A stretch of DNA of 62,002 nucleotides, the filler included, from Basidiobolus meristosporus CBS 931.73 (Eukaryota; Fungi; Basidiobolomycota): the NCBI GenBank assembly GCA_002104905.1. It is 3 parts of 3 records of this genome, joined end to end, with 100 filler letters (N's around TTAATTAATTAA, not from the genome) between each part and the next. Parts side by side here need not be neighbours in the genome. Positions count along the whole stretch, not along the records: positions 20,446 to 49,721 come from MCFE01000871.1; 2 more parts are not named here. One strand, given 5' to 3'. This document shows positions 20,446-46,132 of the stretch, piece after piece. The notes under the pieces are model-generated. The model searched no databases. It worked only from the letters and a program-made list of their open reading frames with translations, and had not been told where the DNA came from. A program made the translations under genes and the position numbers. Within the stretch, counting starts at the first letter, position 1. Each line of letters starts with the position of its first letter.

Positions 20446-21179
20446 ACTGGCATCAACACCTCTTGGTTGTGGGATTTAAATCTTGCAATAGGCTTTTGAC
20501 CAGATCATCCATTTATATTTCATAGGGTCAGTCAAAGTCAGCTGCCCTTTCATCTTGACAGAGCTCTCTCCTAATCCAGGAGAAGATTCCCAGTCAGCCC
20601 TGTTACTCCTGCTACTGCCACTGGGCTATCTGCAATTTTGGAAATGCTATTACCCTCCTATATCAAAACAAATAAACTACCTCAAGGATTGAGGTACCTA
20701 TATACATAGATATACTGATGTTCAATACAAAGCCAGGGATCTTGCAGAAGTTATTCTTCACAAGAACACTGGCAAATAGTTTAGAAGAGAAGTAAAGTGT
20801 ATGCTTAGTTGGGAGCTCTGGGTACACTCAAACATCATTTCAACAGTCTTCACTTTATATCATTCTCTCTGGAAAACAAGCTACACAAGTGAATTATCAG
20901 TAAATTGAAACTTCTATTTAACTCCAGGTCACCAACTTCCTTGGGAAATAGAGAGTTAGCAAGCAGTTTTATTCCATTCTCCACTTGACTTTGACAATCA
21001 GTATGTTTGGGTAGCAGTGAAGTCCTAGTTCATCTGGTAAGTTTTGTGCAATCTAAAAATCTACACTTTAACTTGGCTTCTTTATTTATGATATCAAATT
21101 AGAAGCTCACCCTTTGGCAAGACCTATGGGATATTAACATTGGAAAAGAATGCTCTCTTGAAGGTATAGGAGTAGAAGA

Positions 21180-21370
21180 CTTGAAGTACCAGAAGAAATA
21201 ACAAATGTCTTTAGCTGCATGTCTCAATATCAAAGACAAACTGCTGATTCCATGTTCAGGAGCAAAAATTGTAAGGAATGCCTGGAAGGCATTAGAAGAC
21301 ACCTCTCAGTCATGTTCAGCTGCTGAAAAAATGTATCTTAGACAAGAATTGTTTACCATAATGATTCCCC
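21180..21370 (+). mobile_element. Ty1/copia gag (UBN2-like) relic within CpG-depleted decayed repeat DNA (20446-21520)
   Basis: KYQKK*QMSLAACLNIKDKLLIPCSGAKIVRNAWKALEDTSQSCSAAEKMYLRQELFTI resembles the copia gag pattern (A.IxLxL.D...T.keaWdaL.......kmyLrrqLftlkm). Confidence 0.55.
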
Positions 21371-21863
21371 TAGGAGAAGAAAGGCAACTGTCTCTCCCTC
21401 ACAAAAATACCGATATTAATCCACTGCAGTACATAGTCATTGGAAAGGCTCATGAACTCAAGTTATAATCTGTTATAAATTCATAACTTCTCGTATCAAG
21501 CAGCTAGAGTATAAAGTTGAAGACTCAGCCTCGGTGCGGGTCTATGCAATTGAGCTTATCTTTATCTCACAACTCACTAAGAAAAGGTGCACTAGGATGC
21601 TATAGTACTAGAGTACCAGTTTAACCGCTGAAAATGGGTTTATGCAGTGTAGTGGAATGTCAGCCACAATTGGAAGTACTAATCTATAACCAGATGGTGC
21701 TCCTTCTTTCTTGCGATGCCTTTATCTCAAATTTACAGCAAGCTGCCTCGTGGAGCAGATAGCTTCCTACCTTTTGCGACACCATACATCCCCCACATAT
21801 CATCACTGCTGGGCAAATCTTCCAACCGATTTATTGTAAGTAGCAATTCTCAGAGTCCAACGC

Positions 21864-23142
21864 TTACCCAGCTGATGAAGACAGAGGAGAGGCTAAAGTT
21901 GAGGCCCCATGCTTTCTCTTTTTGCCCAATCTACCTGGAATCTGAAAAACAGCAGTGTAGCGGTGGCCTTTAGATTTGGATAGCACCGAAGTGGTTCCAT
22001 GCTCATCGACGCATGGCCTCCAGAACCACAGCATATTGTGGCTGAGTGGCACTGCAACCTTGTATTTGGGGATAATGAAGTACTGCTCTTCGGTATCGCC
22101 ATCAAGGAAACATACGCCTATAGCATATTGTGACTTGTCCTTATCAACATGAATCTTTGTGGAATAATCTTTTGTCGCGAAGAAGCTTGGGAGTGAGGTG
22201 TCCTTATGTAACAAAGGCATCTGATACTCCAATTGAATCTTTTGCCAATCTTGTTTCACATCGGGTAGAAACACATCTACGAAGCTCTGGATTAACACTG
22301 CCAATGCCTCGGCATTCTTCTGGATCTCGTTTATATGATCAACATCGGATTTCTTCAGGGATGGGATGCTGTAAAGAGAGATTCCGGACATATTCCCGCC
22401 CCGCGGGCTTCTATAGCCCACGCCGAACATTTGACCGGTTATATACTTTGATTTTCGAATCAGATTATTCCGGTAGCCAGGAATGCTTCGCAATGTCTCC
22501 AAAGAGAAATCCGCTTGGTCTTTGGAGAACGGGTGCTGGATAACTCCGAATACAATGGCGTCGTTTTGCAGCAGAAAAGTGGTTCTCTCTAAGATCGTGA
22601 AGCTTTTTATGTCCCGCATGTATATTTCGACATCCTCAAACTGAGAGCAAAAGGATCTAGCTTCAGAAACGGCAAATCGGCATTCGAAGTTGGTTAATCC
22701 CTACGGTTTAGAGGTTGTAAACACAGGGAAGAAGAAAACGCATATGTGTGTGTAAGGACGTCGGCGTACCTTGACAATCAACCCTTTCCTGTGGAAGTTC
22801 ATTTCTCTTACTTTGAACCTCTGGTAGGTGCCATATAAGATCCTCAGCTTTTGAATACCCGGAATATCTTGATACATGGGGCTTCTCAGTCGGTTGCTTA
22901 AGTAGTTGAAGATATGGGGCCTTTTGGAATCCTACAAAACTATTGGTGAGAAATGGAGTCGGTAGCATGACGTTTCTAGCGGAACCAACTTCGAGAGTAA
23001 CGAATTGATTTGCAAACTCAAACAGTAGATGTTTATCAGTAAGCAAGGTGGCAAGGTGGGATGGATTGTTTTCAATCAACTCTACCAAGGATGCAATCCA
23101 CCTTCTCCAAGGTGCATAGCGATCTATCTTGGATTCGTTCAT
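21864..23142 (-). CDS. TET/JBP-family 2-oxoglutarate/Fe(II) dioxygenase, predicted three exons, 383 aa
   Basis: Exons 23142-22990, 22931-22770 and 22700-21864; introns GTTGGT..TAG (58 nt) and GTACGC..TAG (69 nt), both phase 0, give an open frame. Motifs GQMFGVGYR, TKDYSTKIHVDKD (HxD), YFIIPKYKVAVPL...WFWRPCVDEHGT (distal His), RYTAVFQ (2OG-binding Arg); KKRKH NLS-like tail. Confidence 0.75.
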
Positions 23143-26100
23143 TACAGTGATAGTTGTGGGATCTGTTGGCTTTTAAGCTCACCTCGTTTCCATGTTACAC
23201 TCGATGGTCACAGTCATGGTTTGCAGGAGATGGTTAAAAAATTGAACGCGGATGGCGTAACTATGTTTTGGTAGGATCTTCTGGCCAATAGATGGCCAGT
23301 AAAATTACATATTGCGCTACACTCGAAATTGCGCTACAACCACACTGACTGTTTAATGGGAAGTGGAGTGACAGCTACCTCGCGCTTATCTAGACAGGCT
23401 GCGTGATGGCTCATTCTTTTGCTATTAATTACTTTTACGCGCCATTCCAATGATTTAACTTCACGACTTTGACTAGTTTCTCGGCTGCGGGACCATGGAA
23501 GTATAATCTTTGAATATATGGAAGCCTCTCGGCTTCCATCGGCACAGAAAAATGATATATTGTTGGAGATATATATGGTCATTATTGGAGGATATTGCAG
23601 CAAATTATGATTCATCGCTACCGGGAAATCCAACCATCATAGTAAAGTCTGTGCGGATGGGAAGCCCGAAATCCGCCCATACATCGTGATTGGCGCAATC
23701 GCGCTATGGTTGGAATATTGGTAGATTGCCCTGCACCAATAGACACCACCCCATCACTTTCCGATTATGGCAATGCGGAGTAAGGAAGTGCTTTAAACTA
23801 CTACATCATTGAATCAAAGATTAAGGTTGGGAACAACCAGTGGGAAGTAGTAACGCAGAACTTGATTCACCTGCTGCGTCATCTGCTCATTGAAATCTAT
23901 GATCTTCTTTCCTAATCCAGCAGAAAGTATATTACCAATCTCAGTCCTAATTAGTGCCCAGGAGGTGAACACAGTTTCGGGAAAAAGAATAGCAGTAATA
24001 CAGCTATGCACATTCTATGTGGTTGATTTCTTCTATCTCCGTTGATTGCACTTTCGTTCCTAACCGCACAAGATGCGTAGTTGCATATACGGGAATTGCG
24101 CCACAAATACGCATCCAATTCCACATTGTTGGGTAATTAGCATCTACTCAGAAAATGCTCGAGGATAGAGACAAGAAATCGGTGATTTATCTGTATATGC
24201 GTTTGTATTCCCGCAATATGCATCCAAGTAAATACTAACCTGACACCCTTGAAACATAACGTAACTTATAACTGCACCTATAGCTCTAGTCAAACTAACT
24301 GGATCTCGGCATTAGTTTACAACCATGAATAACCTTTACATCCGCCATCGCATGTCAATAACATGCGATATTTGAGTGTTCAACCATGAATTGTAAACAT
24401 GCTCTTGGTTGCTTTGTGTGTTTCAAGACTCATGGTTGGGCAGCTCCGGCTGCTAATGCAAATTGTAGCTGTTATTATTGTTTGGGTTGTTGCTCTACTT
24501 GAAGTTAAATGGATATGCCAACTCCAAGAATGAGCTAATATCTTACAAACTTGATCTCTAGCTGATTTAGGTGCTAGCAATGGGCTACATAGGATCCAAA
24601 GGTACATGGACAGTTTCAGTGTAAACTAGATAATCACAACAGATACAAGCTACCTCTAGAGCTATGAGCAATACCATATTTGTAATCATAGCGGAGGTGA
24701 AATGCATTCCAGGATCTGATTTAAAATCATCTAGTTGGTAGATCCAATATGATATTTTACTTGGGTATTGGCTACTATTGGATGCAATTGCCCATTAGTT
24801 TTGTAAGCATTAGATATGTGATCATTCTCATTTCCTGTTTGACCGGATTCTAGTTAGGAAATGAATTGCGCCAGCTGATTGTCAAGATGTAATTATTCAA
24901 ACCGGTAGTTGATCCTGATTGGGAAGAGTCTCAAGATACATTTCTACTAAGATCGTAAGGTATATAGTAGCGGCAGTCAGGTTGTAGCTGCTATAGGAGT
25001 ATAGAGGAGGATCAAGAGGCAACATTATTTTTCTAGCCAACCTATATGTAGGGCATGATGCAAATCTTACATTTGCACTCGAATGTTTACACTAATCTAG
25101 TCAACAAAACCCTGCTCTGAACCTTGCTGATTCCAGCTCAAATTCATGCAGTCAATCTTTTGCCCTCACAGCAACATCAAACATAATCAGGAGACTGATG
25201 ATAACTATTTATTAAGATACTTATAAAGCAGCTTTATCAGTACTCCAGATACTAATGGCAATCAGACCCTCAAAGTTGACTAAATACCTTGAAAAATTTC
25301 AAACTTGGAACTCATCTAACTTTCAGCTGGTATTCTGATTGTATTTTGTTGATACGAGCTCGTGTTTTTCTTCCAAACTTTTAGTTGCAATTTTAGTGGA
25401 GGTAATAGGCAGCTGATTATAAATTATGGTATGAATGCTAGTTGGCCTATTCTCCTGCTGAAAATATATCTGCTTGTCTTCCTAATAGCTAGTACCTGTG
25501 ATTCTGAGAGAGAGATGTCAGTTTTGAGAAACCTGGAATTCAGCAAATGATGGCATTATGCAGGCTTTTTTTTAATATTTTCTGTTAAGTAAAAGCTCGT
25601 AGACTTCATACATATGCTCTGAGGAACCTTCTTAATGTATTAAACTTGCTTTAGCGTACCATTCATCATTATGTCACATACCATTCTCTCAATTAGCTAC
25701 ATTAGGATAGTAAATAAGTCAGCTTTATCTTACTCTGGCACTTTATATTACTATATGAAGCTACATCACGCTGTTAGCACTCATTGGCACTATAAGTGTT
25801 ACCCAGTAATATTACTTAAGTCAGTTGACATAATATGTATTATTGATTTTCTTGTGTAGATTACTCAAGCAAGGGAATGGTTAAGGCATGATGTGTCTTA
25901 ATTGTTAAAGTTATAACATAAATACAACAGTGCAAGTTTTATATGTACCACTCACAAGACGTTTGTTGGTGCTTTGTGTCAAGACTACTCTGTGCATATT
26001 AATATAGAAGTTTATTTTTCACTTTGAACTAAGTTATCTGATCAGTGTCTCAAGTATGCATAGGGCTTGCTACAAGTAGCTTTGCACTTGACCACTTGCA

Positions 26101-26948
26101 AACTAAAGCAAAGTTACAGCAAGATAATACTCAAGTATCACGCACCATGTATTATGCATGCCTCAAGAAAACATCACTATGCGTCCATAATGAAGTCCTA
26201 GTCAGTAATGTCAGAAATCCGGTGGACTGCATTGGGGATGACCCACAAAAAAACCGAAAAGGTCGTTTGCAAGTACTGAAACGCGGTTTTCATTGCAGGT
26301 TCTTAACTGGACCTCAAGGCCATGCTGGGTTGTATAATTAAGATTGAATGTGTAGTAAAAGACATACTGTTGATGTGCACTATTTTTCTTTCATTTATAT
26401 ATATAGGTAGAGTGCTTGAGAATCAAGCAAGACCTGAGGCAATAAGCTAATATATCCATAATTTGTATGCACTTCAATATACGACTGATCCCACTACTGA
26501 TATAGCATTTGATTTTGCTCGGCTGGATGAGTGTATAAAATTGCTAGCGAGAAGGTAGAGTGAAGGCTAATACGCTAACAATGCATTTTCTTTTAGGCGA
26601 TTGGGGAGAGGGCAGTATAATATGTAGTCAATGAAACAAGATGCAAAATTCCCAACCAAATATAACTCCATACACTTATTCCACGCTCATTGACCAACCC
26701 TCTGTCAAATCAGATGTAATGGAAAATCCCAGGTCCACTGATACGCTAGGTATTGCACTTTATGTACAGGAGTAGTTCTAAACTTGTGTATTTAGTGGCG
26801 AGTAGCTGTGTAAGAATTCCCGATTGGATTGAACATGTTTGCTTAGACAAGCAATAAACTGGAGGTAATAAAGTACTGACAACTTTAACTATCATCTATT
26901 AGGAATACATAATTCTGTAAGTGTTATATATTGATGTATGTTGGCTTC

Positions 26949-28238
26949 CTATTGGCAAGGTGTTTGCCCTTCTACATCACCTTGCTCTACTGTGCAAGTT
27001 TGGCTGTTACCGCCTTCCTCCCCTCCACTATTCGCTGCATCAGGGGTATTTTCCATTTCGGAGTCACTCGGTGGAAGGTCGCTACCACTAGCTTCAACCC
27101 TCTCATTATTGACAGCATCATTAGGGCTGGCCTCAGGATATCCATCACCATTACTTTCACTACCAGCTTCGATATTACTACTTTCAGCACTAGTATCAGA
27201 ATCACTGGCCACGACATCCTCGCTTTTGGCGCCGGTATTCCCGTTTTCAGTACTAGTCTCAGGATATCCGCTATCGGGGTCGGCTCCAGTTTCTCCACTT
27301 GGGGTGCTCCCCTCAGTCTCTCCGCTTTCAGTGCTGCCCTCAGTATTTTCGACACTACCCTCTGTGTATTCGTTTTCGTCACTCTCTCTATCTACAGTCC
27401 GGTCCTCTGTATTCTCGGCCCCACTCTCCTCGGGACTTTCTTGGCTTTCTTCATCTTTCGAGGCGGGAGTAACTGGTTCATCACTTCCATCACTTTCAGA
27501 ACCAGTTTTGTAGTCACCTTCATTATCAGCACTATCGACACTGTCTTCAGCATCACTTTCAACGCTGTCACCATTTCCAGAATCGGATTTGCTTTCAACA
27601 CCTTCATCAGAAACATCATTCTTACTAGAGCCATAAACGGTTACCCCACCGTCGTTATTTTGGCTGCCCGTTCCATCTTTGCCATCTCCTTTATCTTGAG
27701 TATCGAGCTTCTTGGTATCGTTACTGTTGTCTGTATCGGCGGTTTTGCCTTCTTCATTGCTCGGGATACCGTCTTTGGTATTGGCTGCGTCATCCTTTTC
27801 GGATTTCGAAGTGTCTAGCTCCTTTTCACCGCTACCCTTACTACAACCCGAACCATCTCCATCACCATTGTCACCAGAGCTTTCACCAGCTCCAGAATTA
27901 TACGAGTCGGCTTGGTTGCCATTTCCAGCATTAATACCAGTGGCACTCCTACCGCGGCCCTCATCATCTCCAGCTTTGTATCCATTCTCATCGTTGTTAC
28001 CACCATTTTCAGGTTCACCCCTAAATTTTGGACTGTTCTTCCCTACATCGTACACCCCCGCACCGCTTGACTCGCTGGCGATACCTTTACCACTGCCGTC
28101 GCCGTTCCCGACATTGAAAATATCTATGATGTCGTAATCGCCGCTGCTTCTAAGCCGGATTCTTCGGTCCAAGGCTGCGGTGTGGATGACTGCCAACCCG
28201 GAGAGTAGGCATAGGACTTTGGAGGCTGCGAATCGCAT
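26949..28238 (-). CDS. Secreted low-complexity acidic Gly/Ser/Asp/Glu-rich protein of unknown function
   Basis: 429-aa ORF with hydrophobic N-terminus MRFAASKVLCLLSGLAVIHTAA; the rest is polar and predicted disordered; the 3' end is uncertain. Confidence 0.7.
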   Translation of the reverse strand: MRFAASKVLCLLSGLAVIHTAALDRRIRLRSSGDYDIIDIFNVGNGDGSGKGIASESSGAGVYDVGKNSPKFRGEPENGGNNDENGYKAGDDEGRGRSATGINAGNGNQADSYNSGAGESSGDNGDGDGSGCSKGSGEKELDTSKSEKDDAANTKDGIPSNEEGKTADTDNSNDTKKLDTQDKGDGKDGTGSQNNDGGVTVYGSSKNDVSDEGVESKSDSGNGDSVESDAEDSVDSADNEGDYKTGSESDGSDEPVTPASKDEESQESPEESGAENTEDRTVDRESDENEYTEGSVENTEGSTESGETEGSTPSGETGADPDSGYPETSTENGNTGAKSEDVVASDSDTSAESSNIEAGSESNGDGYPEASPNDAVNNERVEASGSDLPPSDSEMENTPDAANSGGEEGGNSQTCTVEQGDVEGQTPCQ

Positions 28239-28765
28239 GTTGTAGTGGATGTCAATGTATTTTGGTGGTAATCTCGACGTTCTAGTCCTGATTTATACTC
28301 GCCCATGACTTCGCCCCCCCCCCAACCTTCGATTGCTCCTTATTAGTGCTCCACTGTAAGCACCTCCCCCTTGCCTCCAATCGGTTTATGCACAGTGATG
28401 CCTCTAATCAGCCGGTGTGCGTGTGAGGTGGCTATGACAAACAAAGCCAAGTGATGCCACTAATCACCCAACAGCATCTACCCGATGAAAGTTGTTTGTA
28501 ATGGCCCAGGAAAGGCAATGGTCGCAGTAACTGTGTGCCTACCCCAATTATACTACGGGCGCATATTCTCTAATGCTGATAAACTCCGCATTCTTTCTTG
28601 ACATCTATTCTCCTTTTAAAATCATTATGAAGACGAAAGAGGGTAGAACCGCTCGTCGAGAGCTTAGCAGTAAAGTAATTAACCAAACATACATTACATG
28701 TCGGTAAGATATGTGACTGTATAATACGTGATTTATTAGTTATTTATGATGACAATGCTTTGGGT

Positions 28766-31015
28766 TTACCAATCTAACTTCTTGGGCTTTTGCTTGGGGC
28801 TGGCTGTGGGCTTGATGGCTTTCCCACTGTACTCTTTACCGTCCAGCCATGGCCATTCGTTAGTTCTTTTCACTTCGAACGCCTTGATCTTTTCGCTCTT
28901 CTGCATGGTAAGACCGATATCATCCAATCCATTGACAAGGCAGTGCTTGCGGAATGGCTCCACGTCAAACTCTATTTCACCATCGGGATGGCGGACGACC
29001 TGGTTTATGAGATCCACCTCAAGCTCAGCTCCTTGCTTTGCAGCCTCAGCCAGAGTATCTACATCAGCTTGGGGAAGCACGATCGGAAGCATGCCATTTT
29101 TGAATGTATTGTTGAAGAAGATATCTGCGAAACTGGTGGCGATAATGCAGCGAATCCCGAAGTCGTTGAATGCCCATGGTGCGTGTTCACGTGAGCTGCC
29201 ACACCCAAAGTTAGGTCCTGTGCACACCAGGATCCGTGCTTGACGGTAAGGCTCCTGGTTCAACACGAAGCTTGGGTTTTCTTCCCCGGTGCTGGGATCG
29301 TAGCGCAGCGCGTAAAACAATGCGCTGCCAAGACCTGTGCGCTTAATCGTCTTCAGGAACTGCTTAGGAATGATCATGTCCGTGTCTACATTAGAGATAT
29401 CTAGAGGAGCAGCGTAGCCCCTGAGTGTAGTGAACTTCGGCATCCCAGAGACAGCGGGTGCTTGGCTACCAGCAGATGGGCTAGAAGCTGGCGCATCAGT
29501 GACTGGGTCTGCTGCATTAGCGGCTTTTTCGTGGTTCTCGAACTGTGGTTCGATCACTTGAGGAGCTGAGGATTTTCTAGGCTGTGGTAAATCGGCTGGG
29601 ACAAGCTTACGCACATCAGTGAGGTAGCCCCTGATGCCGGCAGCAGCAGCCATGGCAGGGCTCATCAAGTGGGTGCGACCACCAGCGCCTTGACGGCCTT
29701 CGAAGTTACGATTGCTAGTACTGGCGCAACGCTCGCCAGGGCTCAACTGGTCAGGATTCATACCCAAACACATGGAGCAGCCAGCCTCTCTCCAGTCGAA
29801 ACCGGCCTCCTTGAAGATGGCGTCCAGTCCTTCTCTTTCAGCTTGAAGCTTGACAAGACCGGATCCTGGGACAACCATGGCATACACCCAATCGGCAACG
29901 TGGTGACCTTTCACGATCTGGGCTGCGCTTCGAAGATCCTCAATACGGGAGTTGGTACAACTGCCGATGAATACTTTGTCAATCTTAACTTCTTCCATTG
30001 GGGTGTTCGGCACCAAGCCAATATACTCCAAGGCTCTTTCCATAGCGGCACGCTTGGCGGGATCCGAAACTTGGCCTGGATCAGGGACAACCCCGTCAAT
30101 AGGGACCACATCCTGTGGACTGGTACCCCAGGTAATAGTGGGGGCAATATCGGCAGCATCGATCTCTACATTGATATCGTATACGGCATCAGGATCGGAG
30201 CGAAGAGTGTTCCAATATTGAACCGCATGATCCCATTCGTTGGCGTTTGGCGCAAGTGGCTTGCCGCGAAGGTAAGCGAAAGTTATTTCATCGGGAGCGA
30301 TCATACCGGCACGAGCACCTGCTTCGATCGCCATGTTACAAATAGACATTCTTGCTTCCATCGACAAGGTAGAGATGGCGGAGCCACAGAACTCGATGAC
30401 ACAACCAGTACCACCGGCAGTGCCAATAACTCCAATAGCATGAAGGACAATATCCTTGCTGGTGACACCAGGGGCTAGCTTCCCCTCGACCCGGATACGC
30501 ATATTCTTCGACTTCTTCTGCAAGAGTGTCTGGGTGGCAAGGACGTGTTCGACCTCAGAGGTACCGATACCAAAAGCCAGAGCACCGAAAGCACCGTGTG
30601 TAGAGGTGTGGGAGTCACCGCAAACGACAGTGGTTGCTGGAAGGGTGAATCCTTGCTCGGGGCCAATGACGTGCACAATACCCTGGCGGCTATCATCCAT
30701 GCCAAAGTAAGTGAGTCCGAATTCCTTAACGTTGCTTTCCAGAGTCTCACACTGAGTTCTTGAGTCAGCCTCATGAATGAACGTGGAGATATTCTTGAAG
30801 TTCTTGCGGTTGGTTGTGGGGATGTTGTGGTCCACGGTAGCAAGGGTACAGTCAACACGGCGGACACCGCGTCCGGCGTTTCTCAACCCCTCGAAGGCCT
30901 GTGGGCTGGTGACTTCATGAACAAGGTGTCTATCAATGTAGATCAAGCAGGTTCCGTCTTCTTGACGATCGACCACATGGTCGTCCCAAATTTTGTCGTA
31001 GAGAGTGCGAGGCAT
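28766..31015 (-). CDS. LEU1: 3-isopropylmalate dehydratase (fused large and small subunit, fungal type), intronless
   Basis: [92 protein letters not shown]. Confidence 0.98.
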
Positions 31016-31672
31016 CAAATTTGATCGAATGGTAACGAGAACTAACTATATATTTACAATACAAAATGAACTTGTAGAAATAATGGTCTGGGGTTAGGAT
31101 TCATGGAAGCAGGCTTATATACAACCCCCACCCCACTGATCTTATCATCATAACTATGAATCATCCCACATCCAAGTGATACAAGACAAAAGCGTCCATT
31201 GACTCACATTGATGCATTAAATAAGTCAACTCTCCCTTTCCACATCAGCTGATACCATTGATCCTGGCTATCCATATATGCTCATGTGTTTCCATGTTTG
31301 GAGGTTTGCTCGACATGCATACTTGGGCTCGGTGTACAGTATACAGTGTACAGTGCAATTAGAAATGATGACTGGAGTAAGTTTCATCGGCCTCATCTTC
31401 CCTTTGAAGATCCCAACCAGCACCGGCGCAAGCGAGGGCAACCTGCACCATTCTGGCTTTGCGGGCCAACGTAGGAACCCATGAGAGGTGTGGACAAGAC
31501 AATACCCTAGACGAAGTTGCCTGTCTCAGACACACTGGCAAATAGCATCTCCGGTGCAACCCCAAACTGACTCCCTGTCATGCACGACCTTGTTTACGAT
31601 TCTTGCTTTAGATTATTGTAGCTTTATTGCAACGTTGGAAATGATTTACATACAGAGATGAATGGGGTGTGT

Positions 31673-33860
<2,188 letters not shown>

Positions 33861-33926
33861 TGTAATGCATGCCTGGAGGTCTGAGGATGGTCTGATCTGC
33901 GTGCGAATAGGGTATAGAGCCGCCCA

Positions 33927-34040
33927 CCGTTTGGTGGCTATCTTGGTTCTATGCACCCCGTCCATGTTACGATGACAATCACAAGCGGCTGAGAGCTGCA
34001 CTCCGCAAGTGTGTTGACAAAGAGGTCACGCCCTTGACCG
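33927..34040 (+). pseudogene. Fragment of a duplicate acyl-CoA dehydrogenase gene
   Basis: Reads WFYAPRPCYDDNHKRLRAALRKCVDKEVTPLT versus WYYAPSPYYNDSHKRLRAALRKFVDSEIMPFT at 35.43-35.53 kb; ctgagagctgcactccgcaag is identical. Confidence 0.9.
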
Positions 34041-34158
34041 GTGGATATGATATTTTGAGAGTGGGCAAGACCAAGATCAACCTGGAGTCTAAGCTAAGCC
34101 AACCAACCGCAGACAAAAGAAATATATAAAGGGTTATCATCATCACTCCAAAACTCTA

Positions 34159-34262
34159 AGCACCAACACCGAGGTTGCCTTTCATACCATCAGTATCCGC
34201 TTGACAAGAGAAGGTGAGGTTGAGGAACATGCCAGGGGAAGTAAACGCGATTCTTAACGTGT
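34159..34262 (-). pseudogene. Fragment of a duplicate aspartate aminotransferase 5' end
   Basis: gcaccaacaccgaggttg...tcagtatccgcttga matches 32862-32907; the start codon position reads ACG (34260-34258). Confidence 0.9.
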
Positions 34263-34992
34263 TCAAGTAGAGGATTGAAAGTTCAATGGTTTACCGAAAA
34301 CCCCTCACAAGTGGCTTTTATAGGAACTCAGCTATTCACACCTGTTAAACCCCCAGTCCTAATGATCGGCTGAGCCTCAATGGTTGGCCCACTCCAGCCA
34401 CCAGGCAAGTGCATCTATCGATCTTCGTCATTCTGACTTTCGGAAGCTGTGTTCGACGAAAATGAACAACCAGAACTAAACCTGAAAAGCAGTGAATATT
34501 AAGATGGCTTCTGGCTGTTATCCGTAACTGTTAATGCCAATTTCCGCTAGGCCAGAAAACGCGAGGAAATGTTTGTTGTATTTTATGAGTCTGGGCTTGG
34601 TTCTTGAATAAGTTATGTCCAGCCTACGGACATTGATCTTGGTTCTTGGGTAAATTCAAATTGCTGCAGAGTTGAGGACACTGCCGCTACAATTGCTATA
34701 CACATCATATTGATCTTCCAACAAAATGCCGAATCATCCCCTGTTGACTTGTATGATGTTTTACACCTGACCCTCGACAATAATCGTTTACATAAGATGT
34801 CCACGTGAAAATACAGTGGGCCCCTCTGCATTTTAATGGGTACTATGCATCTGAAAGGTAGAATGGGTTCAGGGTTTTGGTCTGGCTCACGTGCGAATAG
34901 GACATAGGATATGTGATGACAATATAAAGCCTGCCTCCCCTTTACTGCTCCTCACTGTCCACTCTCACTCTTACCCTTCAGATTTACTAACC
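34258..34992. promoter_or_regulatory. Divergent promoter copy P2 (upstream of intact acyl-CoA dehydrogenase)
   Basis: Shares cactccagccaccaggcaagtgcatctatcgatcttcgtcattct with 33180-33225, and CACGTG at ~34802; TATAAA at ~34923. Confidence 0.65.
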
Positions 34993-36683
34993 ATGGGAAA
35001 ACCACTCACTGCACAAGATGTCCAGAAACACAACACCGAAAACGACTGTTGGATCATTGTTCATGGCAAGGTAAATGCAGCAAGATGTCAATGGCGTGCA
35101 CATGTGGTCTAACCATTTTGCAATAGGTTTATGACCTTAGCAACTTCCTAAGCGAGCACCCAGGTGGTAAGAAGGTTGGTGTAGCTATTTTCTCCATTCG
35201 CCTGATATTGTAGTGACCATTTATGCTGTAGGTTCTTGTTCGAGTGGCTGGTACCGATGCTTCGAAGCAGTTCGATAACTTCCATAACAAGGCAGTTCTT
35301 GATCAATGGGGTCCCAAGCTTCTTGTTGGCAGTATTGGCGAAGCGTCAGCCTCATCGAACGAGGTCAACGCTTCGTCCACTGAGGAGAACCCTGAATATT
35401 TCGGAGAGCTGATACCATTTGGTGACCCATCTTGGTACTACGCACCCAGCCCATATTACAATGACAGTCACAAACGACTGAGAGCTGCACTCCGCAAGTT
35501 CGTTGACAGTGAGATCATGCCCTTCACTCATGAGTGGGATGAGGCAAAGAAGATTCCACAAGAACTATTCATCAAATTGGCGAAAGCGGGAATCCTTTCC
35601 GCTGTCGTCGGTCATCCATATCCTACTGCATACGCGTACACGAAGAATCTCATCGGCGACGTCACGCCAGAGGAGTTTGATCCATTCCACGAGTTCATTA
35701 TCTGTGATGAAATCTCTAGATGTGGCAGTGGCGGTGTACTGTGGGGATTGGTGGGTGGTTTAGGTATCGGACTCCCACCTATTCTTAACTTTGGGTCCGA
35801 GGAGCTCAAGCAAAAGGTTGCGCCTGGCTGCCTATCCGGAGAGAAATTCATCTGCCTAGCCGTCACCGAGCCCTACGCTGGCAGCGATGTAGCAAACATC
35901 CGATGTGAAGCAAAGCTTAGTGATGATGGGGAGCATTACGTTGTCAATGGAGAAAAGAAATGGATCACTAATGGAGTTTGGGCTGATTACTTCACCGTTG
36001 CTGTGAGAACGGGGGGAGAGGGAATGGGAGGAGTGTCACTGTTGTTGATTGAGCGTTCCATGCCTGGCGTGAAGACGAGGCAGATGCAGTGCTCCGGGGT
36101 CTGGTGCTCTGGAACATCCTATATCACGTTTGAAGATGTAAAGGTTCCCAGGAGCAACCTTGTTGGCAAAGAAAACAAGGGGTTCAAGTATATTATGTAT
36201 AACTTCAACCACGAGCGCATGGGCATCGCAATCCAAGCATCAAGATTCTCACGTGTCTGTCTAGAAGAATCCATCAAGTACGCCAACAAGCGTAAGACTT
36301 TCGGAAAGAAGTTGATTGATCACCCAGTCATCCGTGACAAGTGCGCGAGAATGGCTGGTAAAATTGAAGCGGTGCATGCTTGGATGGAATCATTGATTAA
36401 CATGACGAAGGTGATGCCGAAGGATATGCAGATGGTCGCCCTTGGTGGACCTATTGCACTTCTCAAGGCACAGTCCACTCAGACATTTGAGTTTTGTGCT
36501 CGTGAGGCAGCCCAAATCTTTGGGGGTCTGTCTTACACCCGAGGTGGCCAAGGAGAGAAGGTTGAGCGGCTGTATCGTGAGGTGAGGGCCTACGCCATTC
36601 CAGCTGGTTCGGAAGAAATCATGCTTGATTTGGGTATAAGACAAAGCCTCAAATTGGCCAAAATGTTTGGTGCAAAGATGTAG
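34993..36683 (+). CDS. Acyl-CoA dehydrogenase with N-terminal cytochrome b5-like domain, two introns
   Basis: Exons 1-2 KHNTENDCWIIVHGK|VYDLSNFLSEHPGGKK; then CLAVTEPYAGSDVA, NGEKKWITNG, FNHERMGIA, RKTFGKKL, QIFGG, AIPAGSEEIM. Confidence 0.95.
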
Positions 36684-42360: not shown

Positions 42361-43895
42361 ATGTCTTCCTACCGTTCTAGTTATACTGTGCGCTCGAGAG
42401 CCTCCAGGGTTGCTGAGGGGGTCCTCTCTTCATCTCATAGAAGCAGCACACTTCACCTTCTAGCCAATGCATTCCCCGAGTAAGTCACCAACCCAGCATC
42501 GCCTCGAAGTTCCACGAGCTAACATGAGTTGTACATTGTAGTGCTGAGGATATTGTTGGCGAGGACTATCTGCGGCCCTCAGAATGCAGTATGTGCCTTC
42601 CGACCTCCTCCCAAGAAGGCTTTCTGGCTCCCGAGACAATCAACCCTGATGAAAAAACTTCTCTGCTCCAGGACCCACACGGCATGGACCTTTTGGACGA
42701 ACCAACAAGCACCTTCTCCCAATCCGTATTCAACGCCGTGAATGTGTTGATGGGCCTTGCGATTTTATCGTTGCCGTATGCATTCAAGATTACCGGCTGG
42801 GTGCTTGGCTTGTTCATGCTACTGGTGTTTTGCCTGCTGACCCGCTACACCGCCATTTTGCTCCGCAAATGTCTGGACCTAGATCCGTCAATGCTTTCGC
42901 TTTCCGATGTAGGACATGCCGCATTTGGAAACAAAGGAAGAATTGGGATGGCTGTCCTATTGGTTGCTGAGCTCTTAGCTACCAGTGTGGCACTGTTGAT
43001 GGTTCTCGCCGACTCCATCCATGCATTGTATCCCAACTTGGACTTGAACTTACTGAAGGTGATTGGTATTCTTGTTCTGATCCCCTCCACCTGGGTTCCG
43101 CTCGGCATCTTGGCGTACACCTCCATCATCGGTATCATCTCCACCATTGCTCTGGTCGTTGTGGTTATCATCAACGGCCTTTCCACCACGGTGTCGCCAG
43201 GCTCGCTGCTTGTCCCAGCACCGACCAACCTCTGGCCCACCATGCCGATGTCGATTCCCATCAGCTTCGGTCTCTTGATGGCCGGGTTCGCGGGACATGC
43301 AGTGTTCGCCAGCATCTATCGCGACATGAAGTGCCCCGAGCGATTCCCCGCCGTGCTCAGATACTCGTATATGATCACATCCGTCGTGTATGTCGTGATG
43401 GCCGGTGGAGGCTATTTGATTTTTGGTAGCTCCGTCCAGCACGAAGTCATCGTGAACCTGGTGAACAATCCCCACTACAACCAGTTCCTCACACGCCTCG
43501 TGGTCTGGACCGTCGTGCTCAACCCCATCAGCAAGTTTGGACTCACCCTCAACCCGGCCAACCTGATCCTGGAGGTGTTCTTCAGCAACGCGCCGTTCAA
43601 CCTCAACATCAGAGCATCGAAGGCCCGTCGGATCGTGTTCCGCACCATGCTGTGCCTGTTTGTGTGTCTGGTGGCGATCTTGATCCCCGGGTTCCACCGC
43701 GTCATGGCCTTGCTGGGATCGTTCTCGTGCTTTACTATTTCGGCCATCTTCCCGATCATATGCCATCTCAAGCTATTCGGTAACCGCTTGTCACCGGCCC
43801 AGAAGACCTTAGACTGGTTCCTTGTAATCTTGTGCAGTATTCTTGCTCTCACTGGGACCGTGTGGTCGTTCCTTCCTGAGGAACTTCTCCAGTGA
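42361..43895 (+). CDS. Amino-acid transporter (Aa_trans / vacuolar AVT1-like), copy 1
   Basis: STFSQSVFNAVNVLMGLAILSLPYAF, FAGHAVFASIYRDM, NPISKFGLTLNP; one 5' intron (GTAAGT at ~42480). Confidence 0.92.
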
Positions 43896-44586
43896 GTTGT
43901 ATCATCAGCCATAGTCATAGCCATAACCGTAACCATAAGCCTAATATCGTCATACAGTTTCCACACATCACGCTTGTTTCATAAGTTTTCTTTGTGGTGT
44001 CGCTTGTACGTTTTCAATTTTCCCTTTTACATAAACTGCCTAATATTTTTCAGCAAAAGCCTCTTAGTCCAACTAACTCGGCTATCTTGGGCGATCGAGC
44101 CAATGGCCAACTAGGTCATGGTATCCCGTTCAGTACAAGCCGAGTGTGTGGAGCTGCATGACCTGTAACTCTATAGTGAATCTCCTGGCAAGGCAATCAT
44201 TAAGCCGGATTGGTGCACGTGCAGGGATTGGTATCGGCACAGTTGTAAGTGCCAACCACCTAACAGGAAGGTTTCCAATGAGCACTCCACCCATTCATGT
44301 ATGAGCATGTCGCTACCATGGGCATGTGATCTTGGAAATAAGGTTATAATTCGCTCCCTTTCCACCCACTGATCCACCATCCGCACACTATTTCTTCCCT
44401 GACCAACATCAGGATGATTTCAATTTTACCTCATTGTCGATTTTCGATTTGGGTTAAATATACCACAGGAATGGACATATGATCCCTATATAACAAGCGA
44501 GGCCTTCGAGTCGATAATTTGCTTCACGCGTCATTTATTTCGATAAGTAGATCACGCTTTTCAATTTTCTCAACACCACAGCAATC

Positions 44587-46132
44587 ATGTCTTCCTACAA
44601 ATCGACCTACACCATTAGGTCGGCTCGCTCAAGAGCCTCTAGGGCAGTGGACAGCGCCTTATCCACCTCCCATAGGAGTTCTACTCTGCAGCTTCTTGCC
44701 ACCGCCTTTCCTGAGTAAGTGCTTTCAGAGACAGTGCTGGACAATTGGCCGTTCCTTGATGACTAATCTACTTCTCAGCCCCGAGGATATTGTAGGTGAG
44801 GAATATCTGCGGCCCACAGAATGTACCATGGGCCTTCCAACCACTTCAGAGCAGGTGGCCGAGCCCTCGCAAATGAAGAACCCGGAAACAAAGCCGTTGC
44901 TACCTATCCAGGACGAGTGCGAAGTATTTGACGAGCCTACAAGTACCTTTTCTCAGTCAGTTTTCAACGCCGTGAATGTCCTTATGGGACTTGGCATCCT
45001 CTCTCTGCCATATGGCTTCAAGATCACTGGCTGGGTGCTCGGTTTATTCATGCTACTTGTGTTCTGCTTGTTGACCCGCTACACCGCCATTTTACTACGC
45101 AAATGCCTAGACCTGAACCCGTCCATGATATCGCTTTCCGATGTGGGGTACGCGGCTTTTGGGAACAAAGGCAGAGTTGTCATGGCAGTTTTATTGGTGA
45201 CTGAGCTACTTGCGGCTAGTGTGGCACTACTAATGGTGTTTGCTGACTCGATTCAGGCACTATACCCCACATTGAACCTGAACATGCTCAAGGTTATAGG
45301 GGTAATAGTTTTGATCCCCTCCACCTGGGTTCCGCTCGGCATCTTGGCGTACACCTCCATCATCGGTATCATCTCCACCATTGCTCTGGTCGTTGTGGTT
45401 ATCATCAACGGCCTTTCCACCACGGTGTCGCCAGGCTCGCTGCTTGTCCCAGCACCGACCAATCTCTGGCCCACCATGCCGATGTCGATTCCCATCAGCT
45501 TCGGCCTCTTGATGGCCGGGTTCGCGGGACATGCAGTGTTCGCCAGCATCTATCGCGACATGAAGTGCCCCGAGCGATTCCCCGCCGTGCTCAGATACTC
45601 GTATACGATCACGACTGTCATTTATCTCGTAATGGCCGGTGGAGGCTATTTAATGTTTGGTAGCTCCGTTCATCACGAAATCATCGTGAACCTGGTGAAC
45701 AATCCCCACTACAACCAGTTCCTCACACGTCTCGTGGTCTGGACCGTCGTGCTCAACCCCATCAGCAAGTTTGGACTCACCCTCAACCCGGCCAACCTGA
45801 TCCTGGAGGTGTTCTTCAGCAACGCGCCGTTCAACCTCAACATCAGAGCATCGAAGGCCCGTCGGATCGTGTTCCGCACCATGCTGTGCCTGTTTGTGTG
45901 TCTGGTGGCGATCTTGATCCCCGGGTTCCACCGCGTCATGGCCTTGCTGGGATCGTTCTCGTGCTTTACCATATCAGCCATTCTACCCCTGGCTTGCCAC
46001 CTCCAGTTGTTCAAAGAGCAACTAGGAAGAAAGCAAAAATTCCTCGATTGGGCACTCATCATCATCTGCGCGATCTTGGCAGTGGTGGGCACGGTTTGGA
46101 CCTTCCTTCCCAGCGAATGGATTGAATCGTAG
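44587..46132 (+). CDS. Amino-acid transporter (Aa_trans / vacuolar AVT1-like), tandem copy 2
   Basis: Same motifs and same intron position; starts ATGTCTTCCTAC like copy 1. Confidence 0.92.

What the first reader, a model, noticed from the sequence alone, without database searches (positions are those of the whole stretch)
21864..23142. Intact spliced TET/JBP-like dioxygenase, a candidate DNA base-modifying or demethylating enzyme
Seen: a three-exon model with canonical short introns gives 383 uninterrupted codons, with HxD (HVD), a distal His (EHGT), the 2OG-binding Arg (RYTAVF), a GxMFGxGYR motif and a basic NLS-like tail; the ORF track shows only pieces of it. Known: fungal TET/JBP genes are mainly described in basidiomycetes, often as cargo of Kyakuja-Dileera-Zisupton transposons; the Coprinopsis enzyme oxidises 5mC and acts on 6mA; many early-diverging fungi carry abundant 6mA. 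Inference: a possible eraser of 5mC or 6mA, either host-encoded or a transposon-borne anti-silencing factor. It sits beside a CpG-depleted copia relic, and its ~130-aa N-terminal extension matches nothing I recognise.
Basis: partly seen in the sequence, partly recalled or inferred. Interest (0 to 1): 0.82.

Follow-up and report, generated by a model that had tools for sequence, protein, structure and literature searches.

The report
Host-encoded TET-like dioxygenase in Basidiobolus
This is an intact, selectively maintained gene of the early-diverging fungus Basidiobolus meristosporus for an iron/2-oxoglutarate enzyme with the TET fold (the enzymes that oxidise methylated DNA bases). It sits among ordinary host genes rather than in a transposon, its deposited gene model is wrong, and its base-contacting residues differ from all characterised TETs, so its substrate is still open.

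Summary
On the minus strand, 23142..21864, a three-exon model (51 + 54 + 278 codons) gives 383 uninterrupted codons carrying HVD, EHGT, RYT, GQMFGVGYR and a KKRK tail.

The window is the 29,276-bp Basidiobolus meristosporus contig of K493DRAFT_363281. That deposited model splices out 39 codons holding the distal His and the Arg. Comparison with a paralog (dN/dS 0.06 there, 0.10 over the domain) shows those codons are coding.

Exon 3 passes Pfam PF20515 (Tet-like). An AlphaFold model (pLDDT 82) matches TET2, CMD1, NgTET1 and CcTet at Z 17-20, against 13.8 or less for AlkB, FTO and PHD.

- **Not transposon cargo:** both loci, and the chytrid and amoebozoan relatives, lie among host genes with no transposase or terminal repeats. 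A CpG-free copia relic does lie beside the gene.
- **Rare clade:** only 23 relatives turned up among 1.84 billion representatives.
- **Substrate open:** the three positions that contact 5mC in solved TETs are substituted.
- **No RNA evidence:** intron 1 rests on comparative evidence alone.

Verdict: a new, divergent, host-encoded member of the TET/JBP family. Interest is moderate.

The parts
22990..23142 (-). Exon 1 (51 codons, ATG at 23142)
   Evidence: The start and N-terminus (M-x-x-SKIDRYAPW) are shared with paralog L002. Nucleotide identity is 86% and dN/dS 0.27.
22932..22989 (-). Intron 1 (58 nt, GTTGGT...CTCAC...TTGTAG); shifts the frame by +1
   Evidence: GT and TAG are conserved in L002 (GTTAGT...TAG). 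Identity drops to 69% between exons at 86% and 88%. The TAG of the acceptor is the stop that opens the exon-2 frame. No RNA evidence.
22770..22931 (-). Exon 2 (54 codons, frame B)
   Evidence: Identity to L002 is 88%. dN/dS is 0.26 in frame B against 0.59 in the ATG frame. Three of the 4 differences from homeolog L001 are synonymous in frame B, against 1 of 4 in frame A. This is the only frame that joins the conserved donor at 22769 to exon 3.
22701..22769 (-). Intron 2 (69 nt, GTACGC...CCGTAG)
   Evidence: Identity to L002 is 63%, with indels, flanked by conserved exon sequence. All three deposited models use this acceptor.
21864..22700 (-). Exon 3 (278 codons plus TAA): the whole TET-like double-stranded beta-helix domain and the C-terminal tail
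   Evidence: PF20515 scores 31.2 bits against a cut-off of 27. dN/dS is 0.098. The AF2 model has pLDDT 82.4 and pTM 0.82. Z is 17-20 to TET2, CMD1, NgTET1 and CcTet.
22410..22436 (-). GQMFGVGYR motif (exon-3 residues 89-97). R97 is the candidate N-terminal Arg (TET2 R1261 / CMD1 R244 / CcTet R205)
   Evidence: G95 is present in 19 of 22 clade sequences and R97 in 15 of 22. The equivalence to the TET arginine is inferred from order and spacing, not from a superposition.
22143..22151 (-). HVD: Fe(II) ligands H184 and D186 (H289/D291 of the 383-aa model)
   Evidence: H is present in 21 of 22 and D in 20 of 22 clade sequences. They align without gaps to CMD1 H345/D347.
21999..22001 (-). Distal Fe(II) ligand H234 (EHGT)
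   Evidence: H is present in 21 of 22, with G and T also nearly invariant. It aligns to CMD1 H397.
21954..21962 (-). RYT: R247, 13 residues after the distal His, in the classical RxS/T 2-oxoglutarate motif
   Evidence: R is present in 18 of 22. It aligns to CMD1 R410, which PMC7854593 equates with TET2 R1896 and NgTET1 R289.
21942..22058 (-). The 117 nt removed as an 'intron' in the deposited model K493DRAFT_363281 (P0003). This stretch is in fact coding (VAVPLSHNML...RYTAVFQ).
   Evidence: In frame it gives dN/dS 0.06 against L002, and 13 of 17 differences fall at third positions. It holds H234 and R247. With it removed, the PF20515 score falls to 16.8 bits.
21912..21923 (-). KKRK basic cluster in the conserved IPGRLGKKRKH tail (NLS-like)
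   Evidence: The tail is identical in paralog P0002 and near-identical in B. ranarum P0004 (GRLGKKRTY). The sequence after it diverges freely: dN/dS over 21941..21864 is 0.74. Nuclear targeting is inferred from composition only.
23143..23996 (-). Upstream region duplicated together with the gene (promoter/leader), with a nearly invariant block at about 23275..23347
   Evidence: blastn and MAFFT against L002 show patchy similarity with indels. The block contains GTAGCGCAAT twice and TGGCCA-N7-TGGCCA.
20446..21486 (+). Neighbouring copia-type retroelement relic at the contig edge (context only, not part of the gene)
   Evidence: ORF 21205..21468 hits Retrotran_gag_2 at E 4e-4, 20.2 bits, below the cut-off of 27. 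CpG observed/expected is 0.03. The stretch is absent from homeolog L001.

Best explanation
The locus is a functional, host-encoded nuclear gene of Basidiobolus meristosporus. It encodes a roughly 383-aa Fe(II)/2-oxoglutarate dioxygenase of the TET/JBP family.

Shown here:
- The open three-exon gene.
- The TET-type fold.
- The full HxD...H iron triad.
- The RxT 2-oxoglutarate arginine.
- Strong purifying selection since duplication.
- A host-gene rather than transposon setting.

Inferred mechanism:
- The KKRK tail takes the enzyme into the nucleus.
- It flips a modified base out of DNA into the iron centre.
- It hydroxylates a methyl group using O2 and 2-oxoglutarate.

The most likely substrate is 5-methylcytosine, because the genome shows CpG-depleted repeats and carries 5mC-maintenance factors. 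However, the residues that read the base differ from every characterised TET, so the substrate is the weakest link. The protein belongs to a small, previously undescribed clade shared with spizellomycete chytrids, an amoebozoan and environmental eukaryotes.
For: **Gene structure**
- Sequence and exon structure.
- Comparative support for the introns and frames.

**Organism and locus**
- P0003 lies on a 29,276-bp contig, the same length as this piece.

**Family**
- PF20515 scores 31.2 bits, above the cut-off of 27. The paralog scores 32.6.
- The clade profile against the PDB hits only CMD1, E 1.9e-9, with H, D, H and R aligned.

**Fold**
- The model has pLDDT 82.4.
- The top 25 Foldseek hits are all TET-family.
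- VIA-align gives TET2 Z 20.4, CMD1 19.9, NgTET1 18.3 and CcTet 17.5. The next class is at 13.8 or lower.
- The nearest ESM Atlas clusters are a Mucoromycota cluster (TM 0.81), phage Tet_JBP (0.77-0.79) and basidiomycete PF20515 (0.77).

**Catalytic residues**
- They are nearly invariant across the clade.
- The CMD1 W358 position, which blocks 2OG in CMD1, is Cys here.

**Selection**
- dN/dS is 0.098 over 214 codons and 0.06 over the His/Arg segment.

**Host context**
- The order Aat-Leu1-acidic protein-gene is kept in homeolog L001.
- The paralog L002 sits between a cyt-b5 gene and choline kinase.
- Chytrid and amoebozoan relatives lie in gene-dense host DNA.
- No inverted repeats were found in 20446..27000.

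**A 5mC substrate is plausible**
- CpG observed/expected is 0.03 in the adjacent copia relic, against 0.75-0.98 in genes.
- B. meristosporus encodes CDCA7F, which that paper finds almost always together with DNMT1.
Against: - No transcript evidence: no RNA run was listed. Splicing of intron 1, and expression itself, are therefore unproven.
- The ATG frame also stays open across intron 1 and exon 2 in both copies, and codon usage does not separate the two frames.
- Codon usage of the gene is much weaker than that of neighbouring housekeeping genes: 0.06 against 0.29 bits per codon.
- PF12851 Tet_JBP itself is not reached: 13.2 bits against a cut-off of 34.9.
- The 5mC-contact positions common to TET2, NgTET1, CMD1 and CcTet are all substituted. 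HxD+3 is Asp/Asn/Gly in those enzymes and Lys here (Arg or Lys in 13 of 22 clade members). Arg+6 is Phe/Tyr there and Gln here. Arg+8 is His/Arg there and Pro here.
- No biochemical data exist for any member of the clade.
Confidence: 0.72

Rival explanations
1. Same fold and chemistry, but the substrate is a different base. Candidates are thymine (JBP-like, giving 5hmU), 6mA (as CcTet also does), or an already oxidised cytosine.
For: The position that donates or accepts the hydrogen bond to cytosine N4 is Lys here, and Arg or Lys in 13 of 22 clade members. That position is CMD1 D350, TET2 N1387 and NgTET1 D234. Its loss in CcTet (Gly331) opens the pocket to 6mA. PMC7854593 notes that Asp at this site disfavours thymine O4; a cationic side chain would favour a carbonyl or carboxylate instead. 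The Arg+6 aromatic and Arg+8 His/Arg residues are absent. Early-diverging fungi are rich in 6mA.
Against: The residue equivalences come from an ungapped HMM alignment and from counting along a strand, not from a superposition with DNA. A nearly invariant Asp (D188, 19 of 22) sits one residue earlier and might take over N4 contact. F252 (Arg+5) and R257 (Arg+10) might substitute after a small register shift. No 5hmU pathway is known in fungi.
Confidence: 0.2
2. A CMD1-like enzyme that uses ascorbate instead of 2-oxoglutarate and transfers a glyceryl group to 5mC.
For: CMD1 is the only solved protein that the clade profile finds by sequence, E 1.9e-9. It ties with TET2 for the best structural match, Z 19.9.
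Against: In CMD1, Trp358 fills the site of the 2OG C5-carboxylate. The aligned residue here is Cys197, and it is V, C or A in most of the clade. Only four distant members have Trp, and those four also lack RYT. The classical R-x-T motif is kept here.
Confidence: 0.05
3. Transposon cargo: an anti-silencing TET/JBP carried by a KDZ-type or other DNA transposon, as in Basidiomycota and Pezizomycetes.
For: Fungal TET/JBP genes are typically transposon-borne. The gene exists in at least three copies, and a retroelement relic lies 380 nt downstream.
Against: - The duplicated unit is only the gene plus about 850 nt upstream.
- There are no inverted repeats and no transposase-like ORFs in 20446..27000.
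- The neighbours at both loci are housekeeping genes, and one copy is a syntenic homeolog.
- Relatives in Geranomyces, Powellomyces and Planoprotostelium sit in gene-dense host DNA.
- The relic is a copia gag fragment, not a DNA transposon, and it is absent from the homeolog.
Confidence: 0.04
4. A TET-fold oxygenase that does not act on DNA. Its substrate would be RNA or tRNA bases, a protein or a metabolite.
For: The base-reading residues are not conserved. The clade is very distant from characterised TETs (11-14% identity in structural alignments). A shared fold does not prove a shared substrate.
Against: Every characterised protein with this elaborated TET fold acts on nucleic-acid bases. 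The match covers about 260 of 278 residues, including the TET-specific helical insert. The conserved basic tail suggests a nuclear location.
Confidence: 0.1
5. A decaying or unexpressed gene copy (pseudogene). This is how the deposited model, which lacks the distal His and the Arg, would read.
For: The deposited model K493DRAFT_363281 lacks 39 catalytic-core residues. Codon bias is weak. No RNA run was listed.
Against: The frame is open across all 383 codons. dN/dS is 0.06-0.10 against a paralog whose synonymous divergence is about 0.46. The catalytic residues are all intact.
Confidence: 0.03

Closest known systems
Pfam PF20515 (2OG-FeII_Oxy_6, 'Tet-like 2OG-Fe(II) oxygenase'), the mainly basidiomycete fungal TET/JBP family that is often transposon cargo
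   Same: The protein passes the family's gathering score (31.2 against 27). It shares the HxD...H...R core and the fold: TM 0.77 to the basidiomycete cluster.
   Different: The match is marginal. No basidiomycete protein is among the 23 HMMER relatives. The gene is host-encoded in a zoopagomycete, not transposon-borne.
CcTet of Coprinopsis cinerea (PDB 7vpn, 7w5p, 8jkk), a bifunctional 5mC/6mA dioxygenase
   Same: It is the best Foldseek match (E 3e-11) and gives Z 17.5. The Fe triad and the Arg after the distal His are shared. Like this protein, CcTet lacks the canonical Asp/Asn at HxD+3.
   Different: Sequence identity is only 11-14%. CcTet has Gly at HxD+3, Asp337, Phe391 and Arg393. This protein has Lys189, Gly195, Gln253 and Pro255 at the positions counted the same way.
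CMD1 of Chlamydomonas reinhardtii (PDB 7cy4-7cy8), an ascorbate-dependent 5mC glyceryl transferase
   Same: It is the only solved structure detected by sequence profile (E 1.9e-9) and gives Z 19.9 over 261 residues. The His-to-Arg spacing is the same (13 residues).
   Different: CMD1 Trp358 and Asp350 correspond to Cys197 and Lys189 here. The RxT motif is retained, which points to 2OG use.
Human TET2 and Naegleria NgTET1 catalytic domains
   Same: These are top structural matches: Z 20.4 and 18.3. The order of elements is the same: N-terminal Arg, HxD, distal His, then Arg.
   Different: This protein has no Cys-rich domain and no low-complexity insert. N1387/D234, Y1902/F295 and H1904/H297 are not conserved.
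JBP1/JBP2 thymine hydroxylases of kinetoplastids
   Same: They belong to the same superfamily, and the PF12851 region aligns weakly (13.2 bits). A non-cytosine substrate is conceivable.
   Different: There is no J-DNA-binding or SNF2 domain, because the protein ends about 30 residues after the core. The PF12851 threshold is not reached.

Membership tests
TET/JBP family of Fe(II)/2OG nucleic-acid dioxygenases | Double-stranded beta-helix fold with the TET-specific elaborations, matching TETs better than other 2OG-oxygenase classes | tested here: met
   The model has pLDDT 82.4. Z is 17.3-20.4 to TET2, CMD1, NgTET1 and CcTet over 218-261 residues, against 13.8 or less for ALKBH3, FTO and PHD2. 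Foldseek ranks 1-25 are all TET-family.
TET/JBP family of Fe(II)/2OG nucleic-acid dioxygenases | HxD...H iron-binding triad | tested here: met
   H184, D186 and H234 (exon-3 numbering) are present in 20-21 of 22 clade sequences. They align to CMD1 H345, D347 and H397.
TET/JBP family of Fe(II)/2OG nucleic-acid dioxygenases | Arg after the distal His that binds 2-oxoglutarate (TET2 R1896, NgTET1 R289, CcTet R385) | tested here: met
   R247 lies in the R-Y-T motif, is present in 18 of 22 sequences, and aligns to CMD1 R410.
TET/JBP family of Fe(II)/2OG nucleic-acid dioxygenases | N-terminal Arg that stacks on the base and contacts the co-substrate (TET2 R1261, CMD1 R244, CcTet R205) | tested here: inconclusive
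   R97 of the G-x-M-x3-G-x-R motif is conserved in 15 of 22 sequences. It lies 87 residues before HxD, compared with 101-121 in the solved TETs. No residue-level superposition was available.
TET/JBP family of Fe(II)/2OG nucleic-acid dioxygenases | 5mC-reading residues: Asp/Asn at HxD+3, aromatic at Arg+6, His/Arg at Arg+8 | tested here: not met
   K189, Q253 and P255 occupy these positions by position count. Across the clade the residues are R/K, Q/T/S and T/S/P. This bears on the substrate rather than on the fold. It was not checked against a structure with DNA.
TET/JBP family of Fe(II)/2OG nucleic-acid dioxygenases | Oxidation of a base in DNA | not testable with these tools
   This needs an enzyme assay or LC-MS of genomic DNA.
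Pfam PF20515 2OG-FeII_Oxy_6 (Tet-like) | Score at or above the curated gathering threshold (27 bits) | tested here: met
   The score is 31.2 bits, E 2.7e-7, covering profile positions 21-209 of 211. P0002 scores 32.6 and P0001 29.3.
Pfam PF12851 Tet_JBP | Score at or above the curated gathering threshold (34.9 bits) | tested here: not met
   The score is 13.2 bits, E 0.053.
Transposon-encoded fungal TET/JBP (KDZ, hAT, EnSpm and other carriers; PU/AG/PE types) | Gene lies inside a DNA transposon, next to a transposase and within terminal repeats, in many copies | tested here: not met
   No inverted repeats and no transposase-like ORFs were found. The neighbours are host genes and synteny is preserved. 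Only two distinct loci were found.
   The aligned residue is Cys197. The orientation of the Arg cannot be tested on a ligand-free model.
AlkB/FTO family | Best profile or fold match to AlkB-type oxygenases (PF13532) | tested here: not met
   There is no PF13532 hit. Z is 13-13.8 over about 170-200 residues, clearly below the TET matches.

The most novel reading that the evidence does not exclude
This gene and its chytrid, amoebozoan and environmental relatives would form an ancient, host-encoded branch of the TET/JBP family. Its base pocket has been rebuilt, with a cationic Arg/Lys where TETs read cytosine N4 and no stacking aromatic at the usual place. It would therefore oxidise something other than 5mC, for example thymine to 5hmU or 6mA to 6hmA. 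That would give early-diverging fungi a DNA-modification pathway not yet described in them.
Probability: 0.2. Interest if true: 0.75.

Novelty: new member of a known kind. Interest (0 to 1): 0.45.

Why it matters
TET/JBP enzymes in fungi have been described almost only in Basidiomycota and Pezizomycetes, mostly as transposon cargo (PMC12730594). A 2026 review names CcTet and the AlkB-type Dmt1 as the only characterised fungal demethylases (PMC13297926).

This is a conserved, host-encoded TET-fold enzyme in a zoopagomycete, with relatives in spizellomycete chytrids and an amoebozoan. That would extend the family to lineages where 6mA is prominent and where 5mC marks repeats. It also offers a candidate eraser or modifier to test.

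The practical result is a corrected gene model. The deposited protein for this locus lacks the distal His and the 2OG arginine, so it escapes Pfam annotation. The altered base-contact residues make the substrate a real open question rather than a formality.

Tried and rejected
- **RNA evidence:** The look-up of sequencing runs listed no run.
- **Single-sequence search of the PDB:** nothing found. Only the clade profile worked.
- **Codon-usage scoring of the exon-2 frames:** frames A and B both score near zero (-0.03 and -0.01 bits per codon), so it could not decide between them.
- **B. ranarum ortholog as a third sequence for the 5' exons:** its contig starts 29 nt before the truncated gene, so it was of no use.
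- **N-terminal regions of chytrid relatives:** too divergent to align to either frame.
- **Pfam on the N-terminal 135-145 residues under either model:** no hit.
- **JGI model P0001** (28-nt intron from GTAAGA at 22811): rejected, because that GT is AT in the paralog and the intron is too short.
- **JGI model P0002** (single 118-nt intron from 22818): disfavoured, because 22818..22770 is 92% conserved while the rest of that 'intron' is 63%.
- **JGI model P0003** (third intron, 22058..21942): rejected on dN/dS 0.06.
- **P0005 and P0021 from the exhaustive search:** repetitive proteins and spurious hits.
- **Literature:** no paper in the library links Basidiobolus, or chytrids, with TET/JBP.
- **Joined 383-aa model:** not folded or searched. 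See referred steps.
Full report
**What is there**

The finding lies on the minus strand. The mechanical ORF list shows two pieces: 23142..22708 (144 aa) and 22619..21864 (251 aa).
- exon 1: 23142..22990
- intron 1: 22989..22932 (58 nt)
- exon 2: 22931..22770
- intron 2: 22769..22701 (69 nt)
- exon 3: 22700..21864

This gives 51 + 54 + 278 = 383 codons without a stop.

**Organism and deposited models**

A word-based protein search with exon 3 found only four proteins, all from Basidiobolus.
- P0003 (K493DRAFT_363281, 344 aa) sits on a 29,276-bp contig, exactly the length of this piece. It is the deposited model of this locus.
Those bases encode VAVPLSHNML...EHGT...RYTAVFQ, which includes the distal His and the Arg.
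- P0001 (99% identical) lies on contig MCFE01000311 with the same neighbours, Aat, Leu1 and an acidic 426-429-aa protein. It is therefore a homeolog or haplotype.
- P0002 (86%) lies on MCFE01000010 among different host genes.
- The three deposited models use three different exon structures.

**Which gene model is right**

I aligned the three loci and measured divergence by segment against the paralog L002.

| Segment | Identity to L002 | dN/dS | Note |
|---|---|---|---|
| Exon 1 | 86% | 0.27 | |
| Intron 1 | 69% | n/a | |
| Exon 2 | 88% | 0.26 (frame B) | 0.59 in the ATG frame |
| Intron 2 | 63% | n/a | with indels |
| Exon 3 up to 22059 | 85% | 0.098 | |
| JGI 'third intron' (22058..21942) | 85% | 0.06 | 13 of 17 differences at third positions |

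- The GTAAGA donor used in the P0001 model is ATAAGA in the paralog and would give a 28-nt intron, so I rejected it.
- The single-intron P0002 model would make the 92%-conserved 22818..22770 intronic, so I disfavour it.
- Of the four differences between the window and its homeolog in exon 2, three are synonymous in frame B and one in frame A.
- Two caveats remain. Frame A stays open through this stretch in both copies, and codon usage does not discriminate between the frames.
- No RNA run was listed. I put about 75-80% on intron 1 as drawn. Intron 2 and the intact catalytic exon are firm.

**What the protein is**

- Exon 3 passes Pfam PF20515, 'Tet-like 2OG-Fe(II) oxygenase', at 31.2 bits against a cut-off of 27. 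It does not reach PF12851 Tet_JBP (13.2 against 34.9).
- The deposited P0003 scores only 16.8 bits because of the missing segment.
- An exhaustive HMMER search of 1.84 billion representatives found only 23 proteins at E of 0.001 or better. Two of these (P0005, P0021) are repetitive proteins that hit spuriously.
- Outside Basidiobolus the named relatives share 24-33% identity with the query. They come from the chytrids Geranomyces variabilis and Powellomyces hirtus and the amoebozoan Planoprotostelium fungivorum. The rest are unnamed short environmental contigs. Several of these also hit PF20515.
- A 22-sequence alignment (A4) shows nearly invariant H184, D186, F208, P211, Y213, H234 and T236, and a well-conserved R97 and R247.
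- A profile built from A4 finds a single solved protein, the Chlamydomonas TET homologue CMD1, at E 1.9e-9. The iron ligands and the Arg align without gaps.

**Fold**

- AlphaFold2 on A4 gave pLDDT 82.4 and pTM 0.82.
- Foldseek's first 25 PDB hits are CcTet, TET2, NgTET1 and CMD1, followed by FTO and ALKBH proteins.
- VIA-align gives these Z-scores:

| Structure | Z | Aligned residues |
|---|---|---|
| TET2 | 20.4 | 261 |
| CMD1 | 19.9 | 261 |
| NgTET1 | 18.3 | 218 |
| CcTet | 17.5 | 235 |
| ALKBH3 | 13.8 | 177 |
| FTO | 13.5 | 201 |
| Prolyl hydroxylase | 13.4 | 171 |

- In the ESM Atlas the nearest cluster is an unnamed eukaryotic one, commonest in Mucoromycota (TM 0.81). Phage Tet_JBP clusters and the basidiomycete PF20515 cluster follow.

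**Co-substrate and substrate**

Co-substrate:
- The CMD1 paper (PMC7854593) attributes CMD1's inability to use 2OG to Trp358 and a turned-away Arg410.
- Here the aligned residues are Cys197 and an Arg in a classical R-Y-T motif. I infer ordinary 2OG dependence.

Substrate: the same paper and the CcTet paper (PMC11040006) define three base-contact positions shared by the solved TETs.

| Position | TET2 | NgTET1 | CMD1 | CcTet | This protein | Clade |
|---|---|---|---|---|---|---|
| HxD+3 | N1387 | D234 | D350 | G331 | K189 | Arg/Lys in 13 of 22 |
| Arg+6 | Y1902 | F295 | F416 | F391 | Q253 | Q/T/S |
| Arg+8 | H1904 | H297 | R418 | R393 | P255 | T/S/P |

- These equivalences rest on an ungapped alignment and on counting along a strand, not on a superposition with DNA.
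- A nearly invariant Asp188, Phe252 and Arg257 lie one or two residues away and might compensate.
- I therefore treat 'TET-fold, 2OG-dependent base oxidase' as well supported and '5mC oxidase' as a plausible but unproven default.
- Two things support a 5mC substrate existing in this genome. The adjacent copia relic has a CpG observed/expected ratio of 0.03, against 0.75-0.98 in genes. B. meristosporus also encodes CDCA7F, which co-occurs with DNMT1.

**Host gene or transposon cargo**

- Similarity between the two paralogous loci is limited to the gene plus about 850 nt upstream.
- There are no inverted repeats in 20446..27000.
- The short ORFs in the flanks give no transposase hit. The only hit is a weak copia gag match at 21205..21468, in a stretch that is absent from the homeolog.
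- Both loci, and the loci of the chytrid and amoebozoan relatives, are ordinary gene-dense host DNA.
- This differs from the transposon-borne TET/JBPs of Basidiomycota and Pezizomycetes (PMC12730594).

**N-terminal and C-terminal parts**

- The 105 residues from exons 1-2, plus the first 30 or so of exon 3, have no Pfam match. The part that was modelled has low confidence.
- In TET2, CMD1, NgTET1 and CcTet, 65-115 or more residues precede the region that aligns with exon 3. An N-terminal extension is therefore normal for the family.
- The tail IPGRLGKKRKH is conserved in the paralog and in B. ranarum, while the residues after it diverge freely. This fits a nuclear-targeting signal, but that is an inference.

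**Left out**

The catalytic exon was used by reference, and the N-terminus was examined through the deposited protein P0003.

**Novelty and verdict**

- The paralog already carries an automatic 'Tet-like' name, and the Pfam family is known, so this is a new member of a known kind.
- No paper in the searchable library mentions TET/JBP in Basidiobolus or chytrids. The 2026 review lists only CcTet and Dmt1 as characterised fungal demethylases.
- The added value is threefold: the corrected model, the host-encoded setting, and the small clade spanning early-diverging fungi and an amoebozoan with a rebuilt base pocket.
- Interest is 0.45. It would be higher if the substrate proves not to be 5mC.

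Noticed in passing
window 20446-21486: A copia-type retroelement relic at the contig edge. ORF 21205..21468(+) gives a weak Retrotran_gag_2 hit (E 4e-4). The stretch has almost no CpG (observed/expected 0.03, against 0.75-0.98 in genes) and is missing from the otherwise collinear homeolog L001.
   Followed up: partly
window 21486-32879 vs L001: The homeologous contig is collinear, but identity is uneven. It is 98% around the TET-like gene, 94% over the AT-rich spacer and the acidic protein gene, and only 89.5% over Leu1 and Aat. This suggests gene conversion or a mosaic history.
   Followed up: no
window 23143-23996, especially about 23275-23347: The upstream region was duplicated with the gene. 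A block 133-205 nt before the ATG is almost identical in the 86%-identical paralog. It contains GTAGCGCAAT twice and TGGCCA-N7-TGGCCA with a CCAAT box, so it is likely a cis-regulatory element. A short upstream ATG near 23206 is also conserved.
   Followed up: partly
window 42591-43895 and 44519-46132: Two tandem amino-acid-transporter-like genes, 86% identical at the DNA level over 1.2 kb.
   Followed up: no
window 32856-34038 vs 34154-35527: Four collinear 73-82% DNA matches, offset by about 1.3 kb, lie upstream of the cyt-b5/acyl-CoA dehydrogenase gene. This looks like a degenerate tandem copy of its 5' part.
   Followed up: no
window 26949-28238 (-): A 429-aa ORF that is extremely rich in Asp, Glu, Ser and Gly and has an N-terminal hydrophobic segment. 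It has no Pfam family on record in the homeolog. It may be a secreted acidic protein.
   Followed up: no
P0012, P0022, P0023, P0025 (environmental relatives): A subset of the clade carries Trp at the CMD1 W358 position and R-I-[AG] instead of R-Y-T. These proteins are the more CMD1-like ones and could be ascorbate-using enzymes.
   Followed up: no
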